Shown: one piece after another, positions 10,931-29,137 of the stretch | Position numbering within the stretch: position 1 is the first letter of the stretch | How the letters are laid out: each line of letters opens with the position of its first letter | Assembly: GCA_009103225.1 (NCBI GenBank) | Contig: RHPI01003156.1 | Span: 740,159-804,158, forward strand | DNA: 64,000 nucleotides | From: Chlorokybus atmophyticus | Lineage: Eukaryota; Plantae; Mesostigma and Chlorokybus algae | Direction: 5' to 3' | Position numbers and translations under genes: made by a program | Notes under the pieces: model-generated | The model's database searches: none | The model's input: only the letters and a program-made list of their open reading frames with translations | Told to the model about the DNA's origin: nothing

Positions 10931-11219
10931 TGTAGCGACGCAATGCTTATTATCAGTGTCCTGATTAGCGCCGCATTATCAACATGCTCTTAGTCAGCCA
11001 GCGAGGCCACGCGCCTCAATAGAATGCACAGTAGATATCGCATTAGCCAATAGCATGCTTTTTTTCTCATAAGCTTGTACTAGCTACATGCCACACTTGA
11101 GCCCTATTTAAGCGGGCCCTTTCTATTCCATTAATTCAGTCTTGCTTATTATCACCTGCTCAGTGTGGCTTGCTATATGCATGTGAGATGCCGCCGTTAT
11201 AGTGAGTGCCGACATTACA
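10931..11219 (+). repeat. 5' LTR
   Basis: TGTAGCGACG...GACATTACA; differs from the 3' LTR at 2 positions. Confidence 0.97.
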
Positions 11220-11220
11220 T

Positions 11221-11234
11221 TGGTGGAGACGCGG
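11221..11234 (+). other. Primer-binding site, tRNA-Ala-like
   Basis: TGGTGGAGACGCGG lies 1 nt after the LTR. Its reverse complement CCGCGTCTCCACCA matches the 3' end typical of eukaryotic cytosolic tRNA-Ala (from recall). Confidence 0.7.
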
Positions 11235-11363
11235 ATTGAGTGCCTTTTCACCACTCACCGCCCCTGCTTACGACAATTCAGTTATATATTGTCACCGATT
11301 TTATTCTTTTTTCTGTTACCGGCTCCGGCATTTTATCTTTATTTTCAGTCAACGTTGACCTTC

Positions 11364-14300
11364 ATGGCGCATAACACACGCGGCCGAGCCGCCGAAGGCA
11401 ACGTGACCCCTCCTGAAGCAGACTCGGCGTCCGCCGCCATGGCGGGCGTCCTCGACCGCATTGTTGACAGGCTTGAGCACCTGTCGGCGACGAACCCTGG
11501 TACCGCCGCACAGTCCGCGGCTCAGCAGCAGGCGGGCCGCGACCGACGCGCCCGGCCTGACAAGTTTTCAGGCGATCGCACCAAGGAAGTACGACACTGG
11601 CTTGCCGAGGTCAGCCAGTACGCCGAGTACCATGGATGGGACGACGCCGCCAAGTGCCGCGAGGTCTCCCTTCTACTAACTGGTACTGCCGCTGGTTGGT
11701 TCATTAACCAACCCATTGACATCAAAACCACCTGGTCCAAGCTCCGTGATGCATTACTTTTTGCCTTTTCGGCAACATCAGCTACATCCGCCTCAGCATG
11801 GTCACATATCTTCGCCATGAAGCAACGTGAACAGGAGACGGTCACCGAGTATTTTGTGCGCTTTAATGAGACCCTGGTGTTTGCGGATGATAATTTAACA
11901 GAAAAGACCAGAATTGGTTTGTTTTGGGCCACCGTCAAACCACATTATAGAGACAGAGCAGCAACATCTCAAGCTAACACATTGGAGGAAGCTTTTGCAA
12001 TAGCAAGGAGGGTAGAAGCAACAATTAATGATTTACAGCCCAGTCAGTTGCCCAAAGTGACTTTAAATGCACAGTCAGTTGCTCCAAGACCCTATAGTCA
12101 GTTTAACCGCTCACAGCCACGCCGATTTGTTGCCAACAGTGGCGGCAACGTACGCCACTCCCACATTCGTGGCAAGTCACGTCATGATGGCTACCAGTCA
12201 CGTCAGCATGCACAGCAGCGTCCCATGCCGAAATTCAATCAACAGGGGGAACCAAGATGTTTTAATTGCAACAAATATGGTCATTATGCCAATGATTGTC
12301 GCTTGGCAGGCCGCCGCATGCAGCAGAACGCCATGCTTACTACCGGCGAGGAGAACACGCCGCTCATCACTCATTTTGACATCCAAGCAGTGACATCTGC
12401 GACAGCAGCAGCCAGAGGCGTGTGCACCGTTTTTGGCAAGTTGGAGGGCAAGCCAGTGAATGTTCTCTTGGACACCGGCTCCTCAATTTCGTCAGTGTCC
12501 TCTGCACTCGCCGCCGAGCTTGGCTTACCAGTCACGTCAGCCCCACGCATTACTGTACAGTTTGGTGATGGCCATATCACCGCCGAATCTGCTACTGCCT
12601 GCTCTGCTACCCTCATCATTGGAGAGGCGTACACCCAACGTTGGAGGTTCCGCATCTTGCCAACACAGCTGTTTGATGTGGTCCTCGGCACTGACTGGTT
12701 GAGGGCGACAGACTGCAGTGTGTCTGCGCACTTTCTGAGGTTTTCTGACGGCACGGAGACTGCGCTGTCCCCACCAACTACTGTGTGTGCTACCACTATC
12801 GCTGCTCATGTCCCACTCTCAACAGTGCACGTACCAATACGTGTCCGGCCTCAGTCGCTGCCAGTTCAATCTACTGAAGTGTCAGCTCTGCTGTCGGAGT
12901 ATGCAGCACTGTTCGAAGCACCGGATCCTGCAAAAACCACTGACGTTGTACAACATGTCATTGATACGAGGGGGGCGAGGCCTGTTCACATCAGACAGTA
13001 CAGGCGCTCACGGCAGGAAAACACTTTGGTGGAGGACCTTGTCAAAGATATGTTGGAGGAGGGCTTTATTGTACCATCCTTTTCAGAATGGTGCAGTCAG
13101 GTGGTCCTCGTGGACAAGCCTGACGGCGGCAAACGTTTTTGCGTTGATTACAGAGCACTGAATGACGTAACAGTAAAGGACAAGTATCCACTGCCGAACA
13201 TAGATTCCATGTTTGACAAACTGCAAGGGTACAACGTATTCTCCAAGATGGACGCTGCCTCTGGATTCTGGCGGGTCCATATGCACGCTGAGAGCCGTGC
13301 AAAGACAGCATTTCAAACGGAATCTGGTCTATACGAATGGACTGTCATGCCTTTTGGCTTGTGCAACGCGCCAGCAACATTTCAACGTCTGATGCACAGT
13401 ATTCTACGTGACCTGCCCTTCGTACTTATCTACCTCGACGACATTCTGGTGTGTTCTTGAGATGAAGAGGAGCACGCTACTCATCTGCGGCAGGTGTTTG
13501 AGCGGCTCACCGCAGCAGGCATCGTACTGAAGGAACCTAAGTGCATGTTCGCTGTCTCCTCTTTACGGTTCTTAGGCTTTATCGTGTCATCTGAGGGCCT
13601 GCGCGCTGACCCTGACAAGACCAACGCCATCAGTGAGTACCTCCAGCATTATGGTGTTAAGGCTGTACGTCGATTCCTTGGCATGTGTGCGTTCTACGCA
13701 CGTTTTGTTCCTGGCTTTGCTACCGTATCAGCGCCACTGCGTGCTCTCGTGTGCAAGGACGCTAGCTTTGAGTGGACAGAGAATTGTCAGAAGGCATTCG
13801 TTCAGTTGAAGACAGCACTGGCTTCGGCACCGCTGCTTCACTTCCCTGACTTCTCATCAAGCTTTGTATTGCGCACGGATGCAAGCAACTATGGGCTCGG
13901 GCTTGTGTTGCTACAATACTCTTGCGCGCACGGTGCGTATGCGCCATTGTTGTTCGCATCGCGCTCGTTGACATCCGCGGAGAAGAACTACACCACGACG
14001 GAGCGCGAGTGTCTTGCGGTGGTGTGGGCGTTCAACAAGCTTCATCCATACCTACATGATGCGGACGTGCAACTCGAGACCGACCATAGCGCATTGGTGC
14101 AACTCTTGCGTACGAAGCAACCTAAAGGTCGCATTGCTCGGTGGGTGCTATCCTTGCAAGCATACACCTACACTATCTCGCACCGCCCGGGTACATTGTG
14201 TGGTGATGTTGACGCGCTTTCGCGCGCACCCGTTGATGATGTTCAAGCCGCACGCGTGGTGTTAGAGATACCACCACCTCCACGCCGAACACGCAGCAGC

Positions 14301-16055
14301 ATCACACGTTCAGCATCAGCAACCAGCAACAGCAGCGCACAGCGGCAGCAGACAGCATCGTATGAGGGAACTGTGCAGACTGCACGCACTGCAAGTTCTC
14401 CCCCTGTTTACTCATCCTTCATTGATGAGCCCTACCAGGACGTTCCTGCTGGTTCTTACAACCCTACCGAACCTACGAAGACAACCTCAGCGCCAGCGAC
14501 ACCACCGCCGCTCCTGTGCAGCTGCCTGCACTGCTCTACAAGGCCGCCCCAAGCACTACCCCTCAGCGTATTCCAGCTGAGATTAGACAAAATACAACGT
14601 CTCCGGTGCTACAACCACGCCAGTCATCTTCTACTCTTCAAGATCTACAGGACAAGCATGCAACATTGCCTCCGCCGCCGCCGTTGCCCTCACCCTCAAC
14701 GCCACAAACCACACCGCCGCCAACTTCCTGGCCCAGTCCGACCAGGCCAGCCCTGCCCAGCGTAACCGAGTTACGCGGGCCCAGATATTAGACTCGGCGA
14801 TATCTAAAGTTCGCGATATCATGAAAGCTGACATCGCAGGTACCGTCCCCAGTGGCACCTTGATCTCGTACTCGGTACACGGCGCGCTTGGTACAGGCGA
14901 TCTGCTGTACGCGCGTCGCAGGATCAGAGCCGCGCCTCGTCATTCCGGCGCGTTACAAGTCCCTTTATTTAGCGGCTTGTCATGATGACCCACTGATGGG
15001 CCATTTAGGGTTTCACAAGACACTGGAGCGCGTGCGCTCGTTGTACTTTTGGCACGGCCTCCGCGGGGATGTGCACAATTTTGTGAAATCATGTGACATT
15101 TGTCAGCGTCACAATGATGCCCACGGCAAGGCCGCGGGATTACTGCAGCCCATCACCGTTACAGAGCCGTTCGAATTGTTGGCCTGGGACATCACCGGTC
15201 CTCTGCCAACATCAGCATCCGGCAATCAGTACATCATCGTATGCGCAGAGTACGTAACACGCTGGACGGAGACGGCACCCATTGCGGCTGTCAATGCTGA
15301 CACCGTGGCATCCTTTCTGCTTGCCATCATCAAGCGCCACGGCTGCCCTAAGAAGATCCTGTCCGACTGTGGCTCATATTTTACCGGTGATGTAATGGCG
15401 CGCGTTGCCAGTGCCCTCGGCATCGCACAAACCTTCACCTCACCGTACCACCCTCAAACGGACGGCCTGGTGGAGCGTATGAACAGGACGCTCAAACGGA
15501 CAATTTCCAAGTATATTAACGAGTTTCATAACAGTTGGGACTCAATTCTGGGGGCTGTGACCTTTGCCTACAACACCTCTATTCACGCCTCCACCGGTCA
15601 TACGCCTTTTCGCCTGTTGTATGGCCGAGAAGCACAGCTGCCGCCACAGGCCCAGTTGCCCTCATTCGGCCCAGCCATTGATGGTACTACTTGGTACCGC
15701 CAACTCACACAGGAGTTGCCCATTTTGCGGGAGGTAGCAGCTGACAACCTACGTACGGCACAAGAACGCCAGAAGACAAATCATGACGCTCGCCACAAGA
15801 TGGTGGAGTACAACGTGGGTGACCAGGTCCTTGTGAAGACCGTGCGCATGACTTCCAAGAAGCGCAAGTATGGCTACGATGGGGTCATTCATCACACAGC
15901 CCAGATGGTCCGGTCCTTATATAGTGTTGGAACGCATCCGCCCCAACACATATAAACTTGAGAGGAGGGACTATACACCAGGTGCAAGGAAGACCAGTAA
16001 CATCCAACATGTTTCTAACATGACGCCTTATTTCGAGCGTAGCTCTCCTTTTTAA
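11364..16055 (+). pseudogene. gag-pol polyprotein with one in-frame stop and about four frameshifts
   Basis: Zinc knuckle CFNCNKYGHYANDC, protease LLDTGSS, RT YLDD, RNase H LRTDASNYG...DALSR, integrase HHCC (HDDPLMGH...CDIC), core D..D..E and a GPY motif. TGA at 13458-13460 falls in RT. Frame changes occur near 14470, 14780, 14910 and 15880. Confidence 0.93.
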
Positions 16056-23683: not shown

Positions 23684-24851
23684 ACCCAACTCAACACAAG
23701 CAATTAAGACATTGCTAGAATATTAAGCCACGACCCTTGAGCAGCAATGGGAGGAGCAGTAGCATGACAGCAAGCGCAAAAACCATGCCTTCAAAAGTTG
23801 AGTCGTTTCTCAAAAGACAACTTGTGGAGGTGAAGGGAAAGGTTGGATCCCATTTGAAAGGAGCAACGGCATGCACAACGTTCATGGTGACGACAACAGC
23901 ACGAACAACGATTGCTTAATCCCCGCCACCATTAGGTGCACAGCCCGTCTTCCATTATGCTCATCGACATGCGGTTATCGCTTCGTAACACAATCTTCCG
24001 GAGCACAGTTTCCCTTCCCCCCGCCCCCTTTTCTTTGAAGTGGAGACTCTCCAACATGATTGAAGAGGATAGAAAGAAGATTTCAAAATGGGTAATTGTG
24101 AGAATTATCTGTATTACAAATTGCGTACGAATTTTGCTAAAAACCACTGATGGTTGCTGATGCGAGTATGAATGTCAAAGTGCCATTATTAATCTCATTA
24201 TATGTAACAATTGCAACTGTTTAGCGGAGCGGTGCCACACACAAACAATCTACTACATTAATCAAGTTTCGTATTTAACATCACTGTTGCTGAGTACACA
24301 ATGCCTTGTCATATATGCTTGTTTGAGGGGTTGCTCATCCGTGTTAAATGCATGTCATTAATATGCCATAAGTTTGTGACAAAATACTCATGATTATAAA
24401 ACCCGAATATGTACCGCTATGTACATAGTAATGCATGTATCCCATTATCGAACATTGATTACAATGTTGATGATTATCATACGCAGCATACAGCATGAGA
24501 ATAACTTGTACAAGTTCCACAAGATTACGGTTCATGGCTTGAACTTCAAACTCGCTTTTGACATCACACGAGAGCAGGTGGTGAGGCACACAGGTCACAT
24601 GCAAGCGGCGCCTCCTCCCATTAATACCGTTCCCTTGCCGCTTCAATCGCTTCAAACCGGCGGACCCTGGTCCGGCGGTGTAAAAGCAAGCGGCGGCGGG
24701 GGCGGCGGCAGCGGCGATGGCGGGGGCTATGGTTGTCGCAGACGGACGCAGCGGGATGCTGGCTGCAGGTGACAGGCGGTGTAGAGGCTCCACAACATCA
24801 CCCTTCTTAGCTTCTTAGCTTCCCCCTCCTCACCTCCCCAAAGCGGCGGGC

Positions 24852-27294
24852 ATGGGCGCCCCCGCCCCCGCCCCCGCCTCCTCCGCCGCCGCCTCCGCCC
24901 AGGCCGGGCCTGGTGGTGCCCCTCTCCCTGGCTCCAGGGCTAGAGCCAAAGCGCTCAACCCGGGTCAGTCCGGCCAGGCGCTGAGCGCGGTGCAGGAGAG
25001 GGCGGGGGAGTACGCGTCCTGGTCGGGGCTGAGGTGCGGAGCGTACTGGCTGGTGACGGCGAAAAGCTTCTCGCATGCCATTCTCGGCGTCGTTCTGTTC
25101 AATACGTTGGTGATTGCCCTGCAGACGGAACCAGCCTCCTCGCACGCTTTTGGTATGTGTGTTCTGGTGCCTTGCAATGCTTTGCAAGCATGCTCTGCTG
25201 CTGTTCTGCTTTGCTTTTCCGCTGCTTAACTTTGCTTCGATGGAGTACTTGTTCAATCTCTTGCTATCTGTGTGTTTAACTGGTCGATTGAGTCATGTTC
25301 TCTTGGTTGCTTGCTTGTTTTGTCTACGTTTTGTTCGCTCGCTTGCCTGCTTGTTTTCTATTCTCAACCAACACTTGCAATTCTTGCATTGTTGTGCTTT
25401 TGCGCAAAGCAAGTTGAAAAGGTTGTCATGCCTTTGCGTAGAGTATGCCTCTGTCTCACTGCCGGCTCATATGCAGGTTGGTATCTGACCATTCTAGACA
25501 ACATCTGCAACGGCATATTCTTGTTCGAGCTCTGCACCAAGCTCTATGTATATAGAAAAAAGTACTTTGCTTCGCGCTGGAACATTTTTGGTAAGCACCT
25601 TTCTCTAACATTGTTCATGGTGCTTTGAAGGCTGCCCTGTCTGTAAGCAATCATCTAACACTTGATTCGCGCCGGCAGATATGGTTATCATTCTTAGCAG
25701 CTTTTTAGACTACTTGCAGTACTTAGCTTCCGTCATTGGCAACCTCAATCCAAAGGTAGCCTCATGTTTGATGGTTCAGGCATACAATTCTTCTAATTAG
25801 TGATGTTGAATACAACCCACCATGGCAGGTGTTCAGGGTGTTGAGAGTGTTGCGCGCGCTGCGTGCGCTGAGAGCGCTGCGTGTGCTGCGCACGATCACA
25901 TTCTTCCGCAGCCTCCAGATGATTGTGCAAACCCTGCTCAAGTCCATACCGGCGCTGTCATCCATTGTCCTCCTCCTCGGCCTCGTGCTATGTACGCAAG
26001 AATGCAGCACACGCATATGCACGCACACGCGCACATGCGCACGTGCACACGCACTTGTACACCTGCAGGCCTTCACAAACGCACGCACGCACGTACATGC
26101 ACATACACTTGCACGTGCATATGCTCCCACGCACGCACGCACGCACCCTCGCATGCACGAACCAGTAGTTGCACTCGTCGACACACGCATACACACTCTC
26201 TTGCACACGCCCACATGCATGTGTACACTTGCCCAACAACACAACAGTGCTGCATCCTCTGTGCAGTTGTGTTTGCCATTGCGGGGCGGTACCTCTACGG
26301 CACCATTTTCCCGGACAAGTTTGGCAACTTGGCGCGTGCGACGTTCACGCTGTTCCAGATGCTGACTCTCGACAACTGGTACGACGGCTACGATATGATG
26401 CGCCAAGTGCAGGCTTCGGTGCTGCTCTACTTCGTGCTGTTCATCATAATCGGTGAGTGGGACTCCTATAGTAAACACATATTGACAGAGTATAACTGAC
26501 GGTGCTTACACATATTGTCATATGTCTGTACAGAGGCGTTCATTTTCCTCAACCTGTTTATTGCCGTCATAGTGAACAACTTGCAGAGCAATCAGCACCA
26601 ATTCCGTGCAGAGAGGCGAAGGGTAAGGCTGGCTGCGATGTGTGTTTGTGCTTGCAATATGTTGTGTGTACACCTGCGGCTTGTTGACACCAATCATCAA
26701 CTGAGGTTAATGTAATGAATACTTGTATATCTCGTGAAGCAGCAAGAGCGGAAACGGCGCGCCGAGATGCTCGCCGAGCTGCGCCGCAAGCAACTGGTAT
26801 GTTGGCCTGTTGTTTGCATGTGTATGTGCTTCTCTGCAGCACACAATATGTGACGAAGTGCTCATTGTGTGGGCCAAGGCGAAATCATCATACACACTTG
26901 TCATTTTTTACTTGTTGCTTTCTATGTCAGTTCAACCCGGATTCGATGGATGCCCGCAAGCGCAAAGTGTTCAAGCAGTTCCCTGCTATCGACCGCACGA
27001 TAGAGGACTACTATGCTGGCGACCCCTCCATGACAACCAGGTGGAGCACTGCTTTATGTGTACTTTGGGTCGAGTTGTGTCCGCGCAAAAGGAAGTGCCA
27101 TGCAAGCGCGGCTGATTAAACAACCCAACAACATTGCTGAAGATTGTGTTGTCACACTCTCGTGCAGGAAGAAGCAGCTGCTGGAGAGGTACTTGCAGCT
27201 GCTGGCTGCGCTGGAGAGCAACCATGACTTCTATCAAAACCAGCAGCAGGCGCTGGATGATCTGGTAGACATGATGGTTCTGGAGGGCATGTAA
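24852..27294 (+). CDS. Single-domain voltage-gated cation channel, CatSper1-like alpha subunit
   Basis: S1-S6 architecture, S4 FRVLRVLRALRALRALRVLR, pore TLDNW (26365-26379), S6 FIFLNLFIAVIVNNLQ, and C-terminal MTTRKKQLLERYLQLLAALESNHDFYQNQQQALDDLVDM resembling the CatSper1 tail. Multiple GT-AG introns. Confidence 0.82.
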
Positions 27295-27676
27295 AGAGCG
27301 TGCACGTGTGCACATGGCACCAGCGGCATGTTGATTTAAACATGTCCGTAATAATGTCTAGCTGGGTGACACCGGATCTGTATGCCTGCGTGGTGAATGG
27401 CGTGGTCAAAGGCATGTAAGCGTTGGCTTCAAGTTGGTGTTGCACTTCGCGTTCGGGATCTGTCGCCAGTTGAAGGACTTTGACGTGTGCACATGCTTGT
27501 TTCTTTCTTTATTTGGTTACAATGCTGCTCGTTGGAATGGGTAGCAATAGCTCACTGCAAACGCAATGCAAGACATGCGTACACGCGCACACTATGTTCT
27601 CGAGCTTTCTGTACACAGCACCAGCGTCGCTACTTCATGCTGAGCCTTAACACTTAATAACACAGCATTCCCATGA

Positions 27677-29137
27677 TCATGATTGTTGCTGCCTATTGCC
27701 GCTGCTCAGCTTCCACACGCTCGCAGCCGCGAGGTTGGCCAGCGAGTGCGCCAGCACAGGTGCAGCCATATCATGCGTCGCGACCGCAAGCGCACCGTAC
27801 AGCACTCCCACACCCGAGGCCCTGCACATGAACAATGTCGAAGCAACTCACCATGATCACAGTGAAGGTCACAGTGTGCTTGTGTGCGTGTGTTGTACCA
27901 TATTGCAGAGGGGATGCTCCTCCCGCCGCTGGCGTGCAGCGCCCCGAACACGGCCCCCGAGACTAGCACACCAGCCGGGTTCATCCCAATGGCCGGCAGC
28001 AGCGCCCCGCGAAACAGCAGCTCCTGCGTTGGGGTGTATGCGTGTAACAGATGTGGCAACTGCGTTGATATGTTGGTGTGGTGATGCGGCTGCTGGCTGA
28101 GTGCTTGTTTGTCAAGTACGCACCTCACCGATGCCAGGGAGAAAGGAGACCCATAGAAGGTCCAAAGGCTGCAGATTGGACAACACCTGCGCAGTGTATG
28201 ACACTCACTTCAGTCAAGTTAATTAGCGTGGTTACTTGAGTGTGCTTCACATGCACATGCGTGCGTGCACGCGCATGCGCATGCCAAACGCCCGCAGCTA
28301 ATGAACGCGCATGCAGCTACAAAGGCACTCATGCGCGCGAACACATGTACAGCTATATATATACGCGCAAGGGTCACATGCACACTCACATGCTGACGCA
28401 GGCGCACACATGCGCTTGGATGTTCTTCTCACCTGAGCATTGGATCGAGCGCTCTCTGCTCTCAACTCACTCCACACTCCCTGAACCAGCACGCGCGAAA
28501 TGGCCACGGCCCCTGCAGCCGCCAGCGCCAAACCAGCACTCCCGGCATCGTACCGCACTGCCAACAACAAGCCAACATGCTGGGAGATGACCATTGGGAA
28601 CATACAGAAGAGCACAATAACCACAATAGCACACGCTCTGCTCGTACGTGGGAGCTGCTGCGTCCAATCGGAGGAGTTGAATAACAGGCCCGCATGCGAA
28701 GCCTGCCAACAGATGAGAGAGTTGAGATCAACCATGCAGATGTGTATGTAGGTGTTTAGATATATTGGACTTATTGCACAGAAGAAGTGTGTTGTGTGTC
28801 TTACTTGGCGTGCGATCAGGGCGATGGAGGCGAGGGCCCCCGACACGCCCGCACACGCAATCAGGACTCTTTCGCGTGGAGCCGGCGGGAGGGATGGTGT
28901 CGTTGATGACGAGGGTGAGGATGTTGTTGGCGTGCTGGAGGGTTGGAATGTTGGGGGGGTGCTGGATGATGGGGAGGAGGAGGAGGGTGCGGTTGTTGGA
29001 GTGGTTGTGGCTGCACATGGTGATGTCAGACTACCACGCATAAAACAACTGCCTGTGACAAAACATGGCACACGCAGATATACAAATGCAAGCGCGTAAA
29101 CAGAGCGTGTCTCTCTCTCCGTGCGTGCATGCGTGTG

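What the first reader, a model, noticed from the sequence alone, without database searches (positions are those of the whole stretch)
24852..27294. CatSper1-like Ca2+ channel subunit in an apparent green-lineage genome
Seen in sequence: an intact spliced 6-TM channel with an Arg-rich S4, an Asp-type filter TLDNW, and a tail (KQLLERYLQLLAALE...ALDDLVD) that closely parallels CatSper1. Established: CatSper alpha filters are T-x-D-x-W (CatSper1 TLDDW), bacterial Nav-type filters usually have Glu, and the CatSper complex is known from animals, some fungi, a glaucophyte and a few protists while generally described as absent from land plants and Chlamydomonas. Inference: this alga may retain a CatSper-type flagellar Ca2+ channel for zoospore or gamete motility. 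I cannot check whether this has already been reported for streptophyte algae.
Basis: partly seen in the sequence, partly recalled or inferred. Interest (0 to 1): 0.85.

Follow-up and report, generated by a model that had tools for sequence, protein, structure and literature searches.

The report
CatSper1 channel gene in Chlorokybus
The streptophyte green alga Chlorokybus has an intact, spliced and transcribed gene for CatSper1, a pore subunit of the calcium channel that steers animal sperm tails. This puts the subunit in the green plant lineage, and it is probably as old as the eukaryotes.

Summary
Window 24852-27294 (+) carries a 9-exon, all GT-AG gene for a 407-aa single-domain 6TM channel. 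A 1485-nt spliced contig from a public run removes all eight introns; it differs from my first manual model only in using the acceptor 3 nt upstream at exon 7.

The interpretation also holds.
- In a maximum-likelihood tree of the S1-S6 core (84 rows), the protein lies inside a 50-member CatSper1 clade (UFBoot 99 / SH-aLRT 100). That clade includes mammals, cnidarians, echinoderms, a sponge, blastoclad fungi and many protists.
- Its sister is Mesostigma viride (100/98). It falls outside CatSper3-like, CatSper4, BacNav and multi-domain channels.
- An AU test rejects grouping it with BacNav (p 0.005).
- Its C-terminal helix matches only mouse CatSper1 in the whole PDB (E 4.8e-7). The motif occurs in 46/50 CatSper1 rows and 0/34 others.
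- S4 has seven Arg. The filter is TLDNW, so Asn replaces the usual CatSper1 Asp next to the filter Asp.

The public JGI model of this gene (Chrsp23S03822) omits the pore exon.

Earlier notes of this scan report CatSper2, 3, 4, beta, epsilon, theta and EFCAB9 elsewhere in this genome; I did not test those. Flagellar function is inferred, not shown. This is a new member of a known kind.

The parts
24781..27484 (+). Transcribed unit (5'UTR, 9 exons, 3'UTR) as covered by a spliced 1485-nt contig
   Evidence: table 8: X1 record 1, no other letters, 8 GT..AG joints
24852..25152 (+). Exon 1: start codon, a 60-aa Ala/Pro/Gly/Ser-rich N-terminus with no His, and S1 (aa 71-90, 25062-25121)
25477..25590 (+). 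Exon 2: S2 with the acidic/aromatic charge-transfer residues (FLFELCTK) and the start of S3
   Evidence: (Ion_trans 5.4e-6)
25679..25755 (+). Exon 3: remainder of S3 and the S3-S4 loop
25829..25991 (+). Exon 4: S4 voltage sensor with seven Arg at every third position (25832-25894), the S4-S5 linker and the first half of S5
26267..26452 (+). Exon 5: end of S5, pore helices, selectivity filter TLDNW (26365-26379) and the start of S6. This exon is missing from the public JGI gene model
26534..26622 (+). Exon 6: remainder of S6 (FLNLFIAVIVNNL) and the basic post-S6 helix
26740..26796 (+). Exon 7: Arg/Lys/Glu-rich extension of the S6 helix. It has a NAGNAG acceptor (26740 used in the transcript, 26743 in the JGI model)
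26931..27040 (+). Exon 8: linker that is weakly conserved among relatives and of low model confidence in the Mesostigma orthologue, plus the start of the conserved tail (EDYY...)
27168..27294 (+). Exon 9: CatSper1-specific C-terminal helix (aa 365-405, 27036-27285 across exons 8-9) and the stop codon

Best explanation
This is the Chlorokybus atmophyticus orthologue of CatSper1, one of the four pore-forming alpha subunits of the CatSper cation channel. Shown: it is an intact, spliced and transcribed gene for a single-domain voltage-gated-type channel subunit. It has six TM segments, an S4 with seven Arg, a T-x-D-x-W filter, and a long S6 extension followed by a conserved C-terminal helix. It belongs phylogenetically to the CatSper1 orthogroup and was inherited vertically, because it is sister to Mesostigma. 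Inferred: it co-assembles with CatSper2, 3 and 4 subunits into a heterotetrameric pore, probably through the C-terminal helices, together with auxiliary subunits. Earlier notes of this scan report those subunits elsewhere in the genome. Also inferred: the channel sits in the membrane of the two flagella of the zoospore, where depolarisation and/or alkalinisation opens it, and the Ca2+ entering changes the flagellar waveform, as in animal sperm. The Asp-to-Asn change next to the filter Asp may lower Ca2+ selectivity relative to other CatSper1 proteins; this is also inference. The confidence given is for the shown part (an expressed CatSper1 orthologue); I put the inferred flagellar heterotetramer role at about 0.6.
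For: - Gene model and transcript.
- Pfam Ion_trans.
- Nearest full-length relatives of the 407-aa model are eukaryotic CatSper1-type proteins (Diphylleia 3e-103, Mesostigma 2e-96, Rhodelphis 2.5e-95).
- A profile of 12 of them retrieves about 85 proteins whose source names, where given, are 'cation channel sperm-associated protein 1' or generic ones such as 'ion transporter', never CatSper 2, 3 or 4. They come from mammals, cnidarians, echinoderms, sponges and blastoclad fungi. BacNavs start only at 1e-54.
- The same profile scores mouse CatSper1 (7eeb_A) at 262.5 bits in one stretch that includes the tail. The best BacNav scores 181 bits, and no CatSper2-4 chain is among the 60 rows shown, whose lowest score is 170 bits.
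- Careful IQ-TREE (LG+C20 PMSF, S1-S6 only, 239 columns): CatSper1 clade 99/100, Chlorokybus+Mesostigma 100/98, CatSper3-like 100/99, CatSper4 100/100, all CatSper 88/95.
- The AU test rejects green+BacNav (delta lnL 45.8, p 0.005).
- A tail profile built from non-animal sequences hits only mouse CatSper1 905-950 in the whole PDB (E 4.8e-7). The tail motif occurs in 46/50 CatSper1-clade rows and 0/34 others.
- Filter and S4 signatures by clade.
- AlphaFold model of the Mesostigma orthologue: S1-S6, a low-confidence linker and a 40-residue C-terminal helix.
- Host identity: the protein equals JGI Chlat1 Chrsp23S03822 except for the skipped exon.
Against: - No data on localisation, current or developmental stage. 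The runs holding the transcript are only guessed to be RNA, and their culture stage is unknown.
- The position after the filter Asp is Asn, not the Asp said to typify CatSper1 (PMC10120453).
- On single-sequence comparison the pore exon alone is closer to BacNav pores than to mouse CatSper1. The S1-S3 region does not pick out CatSper1, and the fold search does not discriminate NavAb from CatSper1.
- CatSper2 and verified EukCat sequences were not in the tree.
- The presence of the partner subunits in this genome rests on earlier AI notes that I did not test.
Confidence: 0.84

Rival explanations
1. It is a BacNav-derived or EukCat-type single-domain Na+/Ca2+ channel that forms homotetramers and drives fast plasma-membrane excitability, and only resembles CatSper1.
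For: The pore exon alone gives its best PDB sequence matches to BacNav pores (NavMs, NavAe, NavAb; 6e-9), with CatSper outside the top 60. The fold search ranks NavAb structures level with CatSper1. EukCats exist in several algal groups (PMC6509283).
Against: The full-length phylogeny places it inside the CatSper1 clade (99/100). An AU test rejects union with BacNav (p 0.005). The filter has Asp, not the Glu found in all 14 BacNavs compared. S4 has 7 Arg against 4 in BacNav. The C-terminal helix is CatSper1-specific and matches no BacNav coiled coil in the PDB. Helliwell et al. report EukCat clades as distinct from CatSpers (PMC6509283).
Confidence: 0.03
2. It is a true CatSper1 orthologue but works outside a canonical CatSper complex: as a homotetramer, or in a non-flagellar membrane of the vegetative cell packets (Chlorokybus is mostly non-motile).
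For: The transcript is well represented in a general culture run (contig depth 60), although zoospores are probably a minor stage. The Asn replacing the usual Asp in the filter and the lack of a His-rich N-terminus show that regulation and selectivity need not match mammals.
Against: Every organism named for a row of the CatSper1 clade has a flagellated stage (established biology). Protists in my sample that have CatSper1 also have a CatSper3-like gene (Fabomonas, Gefionella). Earlier notes report CatSper2-4 and auxiliary subunits in this same genome. Contig depth is not a measure of expression.
Confidence: 0.12
3. The gene is foreign: contamination of the assembly, or a recent horizontal transfer from a protist.
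For: CatSper is otherwise unreported in Viridiplantae, and the closest non-green relatives are heterotrophic flagellates.
Against: It lies in a 64-kb window of uniform composition. It has eight GT-AG introns and is in the JGI Chlorokybus annotation. Its transcript is present in runs of two studies labelled as the same organism. Its sister is Mesostigma, the accepted sister lineage of Chlorokybus (100/98).
Confidence: 0.01

Closest known systems
Mouse CatSper1 (PDB 7EEB chain A, the CatSpermasome)
   Same: Single 6TM domain; T-L-D-x-W filter; S4 with a long run of basic residues at every third position; the same C-terminal helix at the extreme C-terminus. Both lie in the same clade in the tree through other mammalian CatSper1 proteins. 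The Mesostigma orthologue model is 34% identical to 7eeb_A over 256 aligned columns.
   Different: The alga has no long His-rich N-terminal domain: its N-terminus is 60 aa with no His, against several hundred residues before the channel domain in mammals. The filter is TLDNW rather than TLDDW. S4 has seven Arg, whereas mammals have Lys at two positions. Mammalian sequences sit on a very long branch (1.55).
Mesostigma viride Mv00989 (JGI Mesvir1; P0001)
   Same: Sister in the tree (100/98). It is 58% identical over the S1-S6 core and 48.5% overall, with the same architecture and tail.
   Different: Mesostigma keeps TLDDW. Its N-terminus is shorter.
Protist CatSper1-type proteins (Thecamonas trahens XP_013763141.1, Diphylleia, Rhodelphis, Fabomonas, Gefionella, Ancoracysta, Paratrimastix, Hondaea)
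   Same: Same clade, with the same filter, S4 and tail motifs.
   Different: They differ only in variable N-termini and in the linker between S6 and the tail.
Bacterial voltage-gated sodium channels (NavAb, NavMs, NaChBac)
   Same: Same fold and single-domain design. They are the best single-sequence match of the pore exon.
   Different: Glu rather than Asp in the filter, four S4 Arg, no CatSper1 tail, a separate clade, homotetrameric.
CatSper3-like (protists) and CatSper4 (turtles)
   Same: They join CatSper1 in one CatSper superclade (88/95) and also have Asp in the filter.
   Different: Their filters are T-A-D-G-W and T-Q-D-G-W, with Gly after the Asp. S4 has four Arg (CatSper3-like) or about two (CatSper4). 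They have no CatSper1 tail.

Membership tests
CatSper1 (pore-forming alpha subunit 1 of CatSper) | Single-domain 6TM voltage-gated-type cation channel subunit (Pfam Ion_trans) | tested here: met
   Ion_trans matches on exons 2, 4, 5 and 6. The orthologue P0001 scores 7e-40 over positions 1-237/241. The predicted fold has S1-S6.
CatSper1 (pore-forming alpha subunit 1 of CatSper) | Falls inside the clade that holds animal CatSper1, to the exclusion of other CatSper paralogues and BacNav | tested here: met
   CatSper1 clade of 50 rows at UFBoot 99 / SH-aLRT 100. CatSper3-like and CatSper4 form separate clades. AU test against BacNav gives p 0.005. CatSper2 was not available for the tree.
CatSper1 (pore-forming alpha subunit 1 of CatSper) | T-x-D-x-W selectivity filter | tested here: met
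   TLDNW at aa 252-256.
CatSper1 (pore-forming alpha subunit 1 of CatSper) | Asp at the position after the filter Asp (the 'beacon', TLDDW), which PMC10120453 says distinguishes CatSper1 from CatSper2/3/4 (Gly) | tested here: not met
   Chlorokybus has Asn. Mesostigma and 41 of the 49 other CatSper1-clade rows of the final tree have Asp. A few fungal sequences and one Logan-derived (public-run assembly) sequence also deviate (Glu, Asn, Ser). The RNA contig confirms the codon. It is not Gly, so the position still differs from the CatSper3/4 type.
CatSper1 (pore-forming alpha subunit 1 of CatSper) | Strongly charged S4, with more basic residues than the other CatSper subunits | tested here: met
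   Seven Arg at every third position, against four in CatSper3-like, about two in CatSper4 and four in BacNav.
CatSper1 (pore-forming alpha subunit 1 of CatSper) | Conserved C-terminal helix shared with mouse CatSper1 | tested here: met
   Tail profile against the PDB hits only 7eeb_A 905-950, E 4.8e-7. The motif is in 46/50 CatSper1 rows and 0/34 others. It is a helix of pLDDT about 80 in the orthologue model.
CatSper1 (pore-forming alpha subunit 1 of CatSper) | His-rich N-terminal domain | tested here: not met
   No His in the first 60 aa. This appears to be a mammalian addition. Cnidarian, sponge and protist CatSper1 proteins of 376-460 aa have no room for it either, so it does not define the orthogroup.
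CatSper1 (pore-forming alpha subunit 1 of CatSper) | Co-occurrence with CatSper2, 3, 4 and auxiliary subunits in the same genome | not tested
   Reported by earlier AI notes of this scan for other pieces of this genome.
CatSper1 (pore-forming alpha subunit 1 of CatSper) | Flagellar localisation and a Ca2+-selective, pH- and voltage-dependent current | not testable with these tools
   Needs proteomics, imaging or electrophysiology.
BacNav | Glu-based filter (TLESW/TLEGW type) and membership of the bacterial clade | tested here: not met
   Asp in the filter. A separate clade. AU test p 0.005.
EukCat (A-C) | Membership of the EukCat clades of Helliwell et al. 2019 | not tested
   No verified EukCat sequence could be fetched. 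The paper reports EukCats as distinct from CatSpers (PMC6509283), and the window protein is nested in CatSper1 at 99/100.

The most novel reading that the evidence does not exclude
[quoted passage not shown] In that case 'the sperm channel' is an ancestral eukaryotic flagellar Ca2+ channel that was lost in Chlorophyta and in the lineage leading to land plants. The Chlorokybus Asp-to-Asn change beside the filter Asp would then mark a natural variant with altered ion selectivity.
Probability: 0.45. Interest if true: 0.8.

Novelty: new member of a known kind. Interest (0 to 1): 0.66.

Why it matters
Reviews place the origin of CatSper in the common ancestor of apusozoans, animals and fungi (PMC7935092). 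They describe it as lacking in Arabidopsis (PMC5406480) and Chlamydomonas (bioRxiv 10.1101/2020.08.17.240366), with scattered mentions of stramenopiles and glaucophytes (PMC10120453).

A bona fide CatSper1 orthologue in the earliest-branching streptophyte algae changes that picture. It sits beside orthologues in Rhodelphis, malawimonads, ancyromonads, CRuMs (the protist group that includes Diphylleia), a metamonad, a foraminifer and a colponemid. This distribution argues that the subunit dates to the last eukaryotic common ancestor, or close to it, and was lost repeatedly, including within green plants.

It also offers photosynthetic organisms that can be grown in culture, notably the permanently flagellate Mesostigma. 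In these, a channel that has resisted heterologous expression might be studied in its native setting.

On the practical side, the public Chlorokybus gene model lacks the pore exon. That omission would hide the gene from filter-based channel surveys.

Tried and rejected
- PDB sequence searches with single exons. The pore exon favoured BacNav, the S4 exon favoured eukaryotic Nav domains, and S1-S3 did not list CatSper1 in the top 60. Single short pieces do not discriminate, and mammalian CatSper1 is fast-evolving.
- Foldseek of the orthologue model against the PDB. NavAb and CatSper1 were indistinguishable, as expected for one fold. The tail is not resolved in 7EEB (258 residues aligned).
- The protein-atlas search gave only family-level neighbours (clusters named CatSper2-like and CatSper3; the top cluster carries a generic name) and no usable ids.
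- I could not pass the spliced 407-aa protein to the remote tools by reference. Remote searches therefore used exon pieces, the exon-skipping JGI model P0180 or the Mesostigma orthologue. The full model was used only in local scripts.
- To get other CatSper paralogues I used a long-query alignment, so that the length filter removed BacNavs. That yielded CatSper4 from turtles and one protist sequence. Used as a query, the protist sequence gave a CatSper3-like family. No CatSper2 seed was obtained.
- Cai, Wang & Clapham 2014 (the key survey) is not held, and the supplements of Helliwell 2019 are not held. Cai & Clapham 2008 mentions no plants or algae.
- Literature searches for CatSper with Chlorokybus found 0 papers. 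CatSper with Mesostigma found one unrelated paper. Among the 20 listed results of a combined search of CatSper with Archaeplastida, streptophyte, LECA and related terms, none contained CatSper.
- The contamination/HGT and BacNav/EukCat readings were considered and rejected on the tree, the introns and the annotation identity.
Full report
**Observation.**
Reading window 24400-27800 and assembling exons by eye and by script gives a nine-exon gene on the + strand.

Public runs hold it in spliced form. One 1485-nt contig (run X1) spans 24781-27484 with all eight introns removed and no mismatch. Two shorter contigs from a second study (X2) confirm three of the junctions. The transcript uses the upstream AG of a NAGNAG acceptor at exon 7 (26740 rather than 26743), so the protein is 407 aa. 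Pfam Ion_trans matches four of the exon pieces.

**Host.**
A profile search returned the protein jgi/Chlat1/3438/Chrsp23S03822 (P0180, 341 aa). This is the JGI Chlorokybus atmophyticus model of this same gene. It is identical in the shared exons but joins exon 4 directly to exon 6, and so lacks 65 residues: the end of S5, both pore helices, the selectivity filter and the start of S6. The RNA contig shows that exon 5 is included.

The window has uniform composition. It also carries a Ty3/gypsy-type retroelement and other spliced genes. Contamination is not a tenable reading.

**What it is related to.**
Single exons are ambiguous. The pore exon is closest to bacterial Nav pores in the PDB and the S4 exon to eukaryotic Nav domains.

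An exhaustive HMMER scan with the pore exon gave full-length proteins. I scored these locally against the whole 407-aa model. The best are:
- Diphylleia rotans, 3e-103
- Mesostigma viride, 2e-96
- Rhodelphis marinus, 2.5e-95
- Ancoracysta, Fabomonas and Thecamonas
- metagenomic proteins that JGI names 'cation channel sperm-associated protein 1'

A profile of twelve of these (A1) retrieved about 85 relatives. Their source names, wherever given, are 'CatSper 1' or generic names such as 'ion transporter', and never CatSper 2, 3 or 4. They come from mammals, cnidarians, echinoderms, hemichordates, amphioxus, sponges, blastoclad fungi and protists. Bacterial Nav channels begin only at E 1e-54.

Against the PDB, the same profile scores mouse CatSper1 (7eeb_A) at 262.5 bits in one stretch that runs through the tail. 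The best BacNav scores 181 bits and the best single domain of Cav3.1 scores 122 bits. No CatSper2-4 chain is among the 60 rows shown, whose lowest score is 170 bits.

**Phylogeny.**
I obtained CatSper4 sequences (three turtles) by using only long CatSper1 proteins as the query, so that the length filter removed BacNavs. A protist family that JGI names CatSper 3 came from a follow-up search; it includes Pygsuia, Picozoa, Fabomonas and Gefionella.

The tree has 84 rows restricted to the S1-S6 core (239 columns, tail excluded). It was built with IQ-TREE LG+C20+F+G4 PMSF in careful mode.

| Grouping | UFBoot / SH-aLRT |
|---|---|
| CatSper1 clade (50 rows, branch 0.72, includes the window protein) | 99 / 100 |
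| Chlorokybus + Mesostigma | 100 / 98 |
| CatSper3-like | 100 / 99 |
| CatSper4 | 100 / 100 |
| All CatSper together | 88 / 95 |

BacNav and multi-domain channel domains fall outside. Rhodelphis is the next neighbour of the green pair, but without support (11/78). An AU test rejects the best tree that unites the green pair with BacNavs (delta lnL 45.8, p 0.005).

Two caveats apply. The bootstrap had not fully converged (correlation 0.987). No verified CatSper2 or EukCat sequences were available.

**Clade signatures.**

| Group | Filter | S4 Arg at every third position |
|---|---|---|
| CatSper1 clade | TLDDW | six or seven |
| CatSper3-like | TADGW | four |
| CatSper4 | TQDGW | about two |
| BacNav | TLESW / TLEGW | four |
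| Chlorokybus (this gene) | TLDNW | seven |

The Asp after the filter Asp is replaced by Asn in Chlorokybus. A review calls this residue the 'beacon' and regards it as typical of CatSper1, against Gly in CatSper2/3/4 (PMC10120453). Mesostigma keeps Asp. The codon is confirmed by the RNA contig.

**The tail.**
The last 41 residues align to residues 905-945 of the mouse CatSper1 chain (E 0.048 as a single sequence). A profile of the tails of twelve non-animal orthologues (A2) hits only that chain in the entire PDB, at its extreme C-terminus (905-950, E 4.8e-7). The PDB also holds the other CatSper subunits and the full-length BacNav coiled coils.

Locally, the motif is found in 46 of 50 CatSper1-clade rows and in none of the 34 others. 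In an AlphaFold model of the Mesostigma orthologue (mean pLDDT 72.5), S6 continues as a long helix. A low-confidence linker follows, and the tail forms a 40-residue helix of pLDDT about 80. Foldseek does not discriminate NavAb from CatSper1, as expected for one fold.

**How it most likely works.**
- Shown: this is an intact, expressed CatSper1 orthologue with a complete voltage-sensor signature. S2 carries FxxExxxK, S3 carries the NxxD acidic site, and S4 has seven Arg. The filter is Asp-based.
- Inferred from the animal complex (7EEB) and from co-occurrence in protists: Fabomonas and Gefionella each have both a CatSper1 and a CatSper3-like gene. On this basis the protein would form one quarter of a heterotetrameric pore with CatSper2-4, assembled partly through C-terminal helices.
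- Inferred from biology: Chlorokybus makes biflagellate zoospores, Mesostigma is a biflagellate cell, and every organism named for a row of the clade has a flagellated stage. The channel would therefore sit in the flagellar membrane and convert depolarisation or alkalinisation into Ca2+ entry that alters the beat.
- The mammalian His-rich N-terminus is absent (no His in the first 60 aa), so any pH sensing would need another component.
- Earlier notes of this scan report CatSper2, 3, 4, beta, epsilon, theta and EFCAB9 genes on other pieces of this genome. I did not test those, and I use them only as leads. This finding would supply the fourth pore subunit.

**Comparison with what is known.**
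- Arabidopsis is said to lack it (PMC5406480).
- Chlamydomonas is said to lack it, while glaucophytes have it (bioRxiv 10.1101/2020.08.17.240366).
- One review lists yeast (the review's wording), apusozoans, stramenopiles and glaucophytes as holders (PMC10120453).
- No paper in the library pairs CatSper with Chlorokybus. The only one pairing it with Mesostigma is unrelated.
- The key survey (Cai et al. 2014) is not held.

I therefore rate this as a new member of a known kind: the family is known, but the lineage is new. Together with the protist orthologues seen here, it argues for an origin at or near the last eukaryotic common ancestor, followed by loss in most green plants. Among the named hits of the profile search, the only Viridiplantae are Chlorokybus and Mesostigma. 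That search is word-indexed, however, so absence elsewhere is not proven.

**Verdict.**
Observation confirmed and interpretation supported. Orthology to CatSper1 is well established. The flagellar heterotetramer function is a reasoned inference that still needs proteomics or physiology.

Noticed in passing
window 25982-26535 (relative to JGI model Chrsp23S03822 = P0180): The public JGI Chlorokybus gene model joins exon 4 to exon 6 through alternative GT/AG sites. It omits 65 residues: the end of S5, the pore helices, the filter and the start of S6. The spliced RNA contig includes exon 5, so the annotation is wrong or reflects a non-functional isoform.
   Followed up: yes
window 26738-26745: NAGNAG tandem acceptor (AAG|CAG|CAA) at exon 7. 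The transcript contig uses 26740 and the JGI model uses 26743, a difference of one Gln.
   Followed up: partly
window 11202-15955 (+): Ty3/gypsy-type LTR retroelement of the alga, read as three consecutive long ORFs: gag/zinc knuckle/aspartyl protease/RT, then RNase H, then integrase. The polyprotein is interrupted at least twice.
   Followed up: partly
window 27706-28128 (-): An ORF piece with a CAAX prenyl protease / Rce1-like (CPBP) match (7e-5). It is probably an exon of a convergently oriented neighbouring gene, and it lies only about 220 bases beyond the end of the spliced transcript contig (27484).
   Followed up: no
window 25992-26266 (intron 4): The intron is made largely of imperfect CACGCA/CGCACA-type low-complexity repeats. 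Its translation produces the long spurious ORFs listed on both strands.
   Followed up: no
related proteins P0037, P0074, P0007, P0106, P0004, P0041, P0155, P0164, P0181, P0293: CatSper1-type proteins occur in CRuMs (Diphylleia), malawimonads (Gefionella), Rhodelphis, Ancoracysta, ancyromonads (Fabomonas), a metamonad (Paratrimastix), a foraminifer (Nonionella), a colponemid (Colp12) and a thraustochytrid (Hondaea). CatSper3-like proteins occur in Picozoa, Pygsuia, Fabomonas and Gefionella. This is far wider than the 'Apusozoa + animals + fungi' origin given in reviews.
   Followed up: partly
protein P0048 (781 aa, UPI00078A395A): This protein matches the CatSper1 profile twice in tandem (residues 57-373 and 534-766). 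It is either a two-domain CatSper1-like protein or a fused gene model.
   Followed up: no
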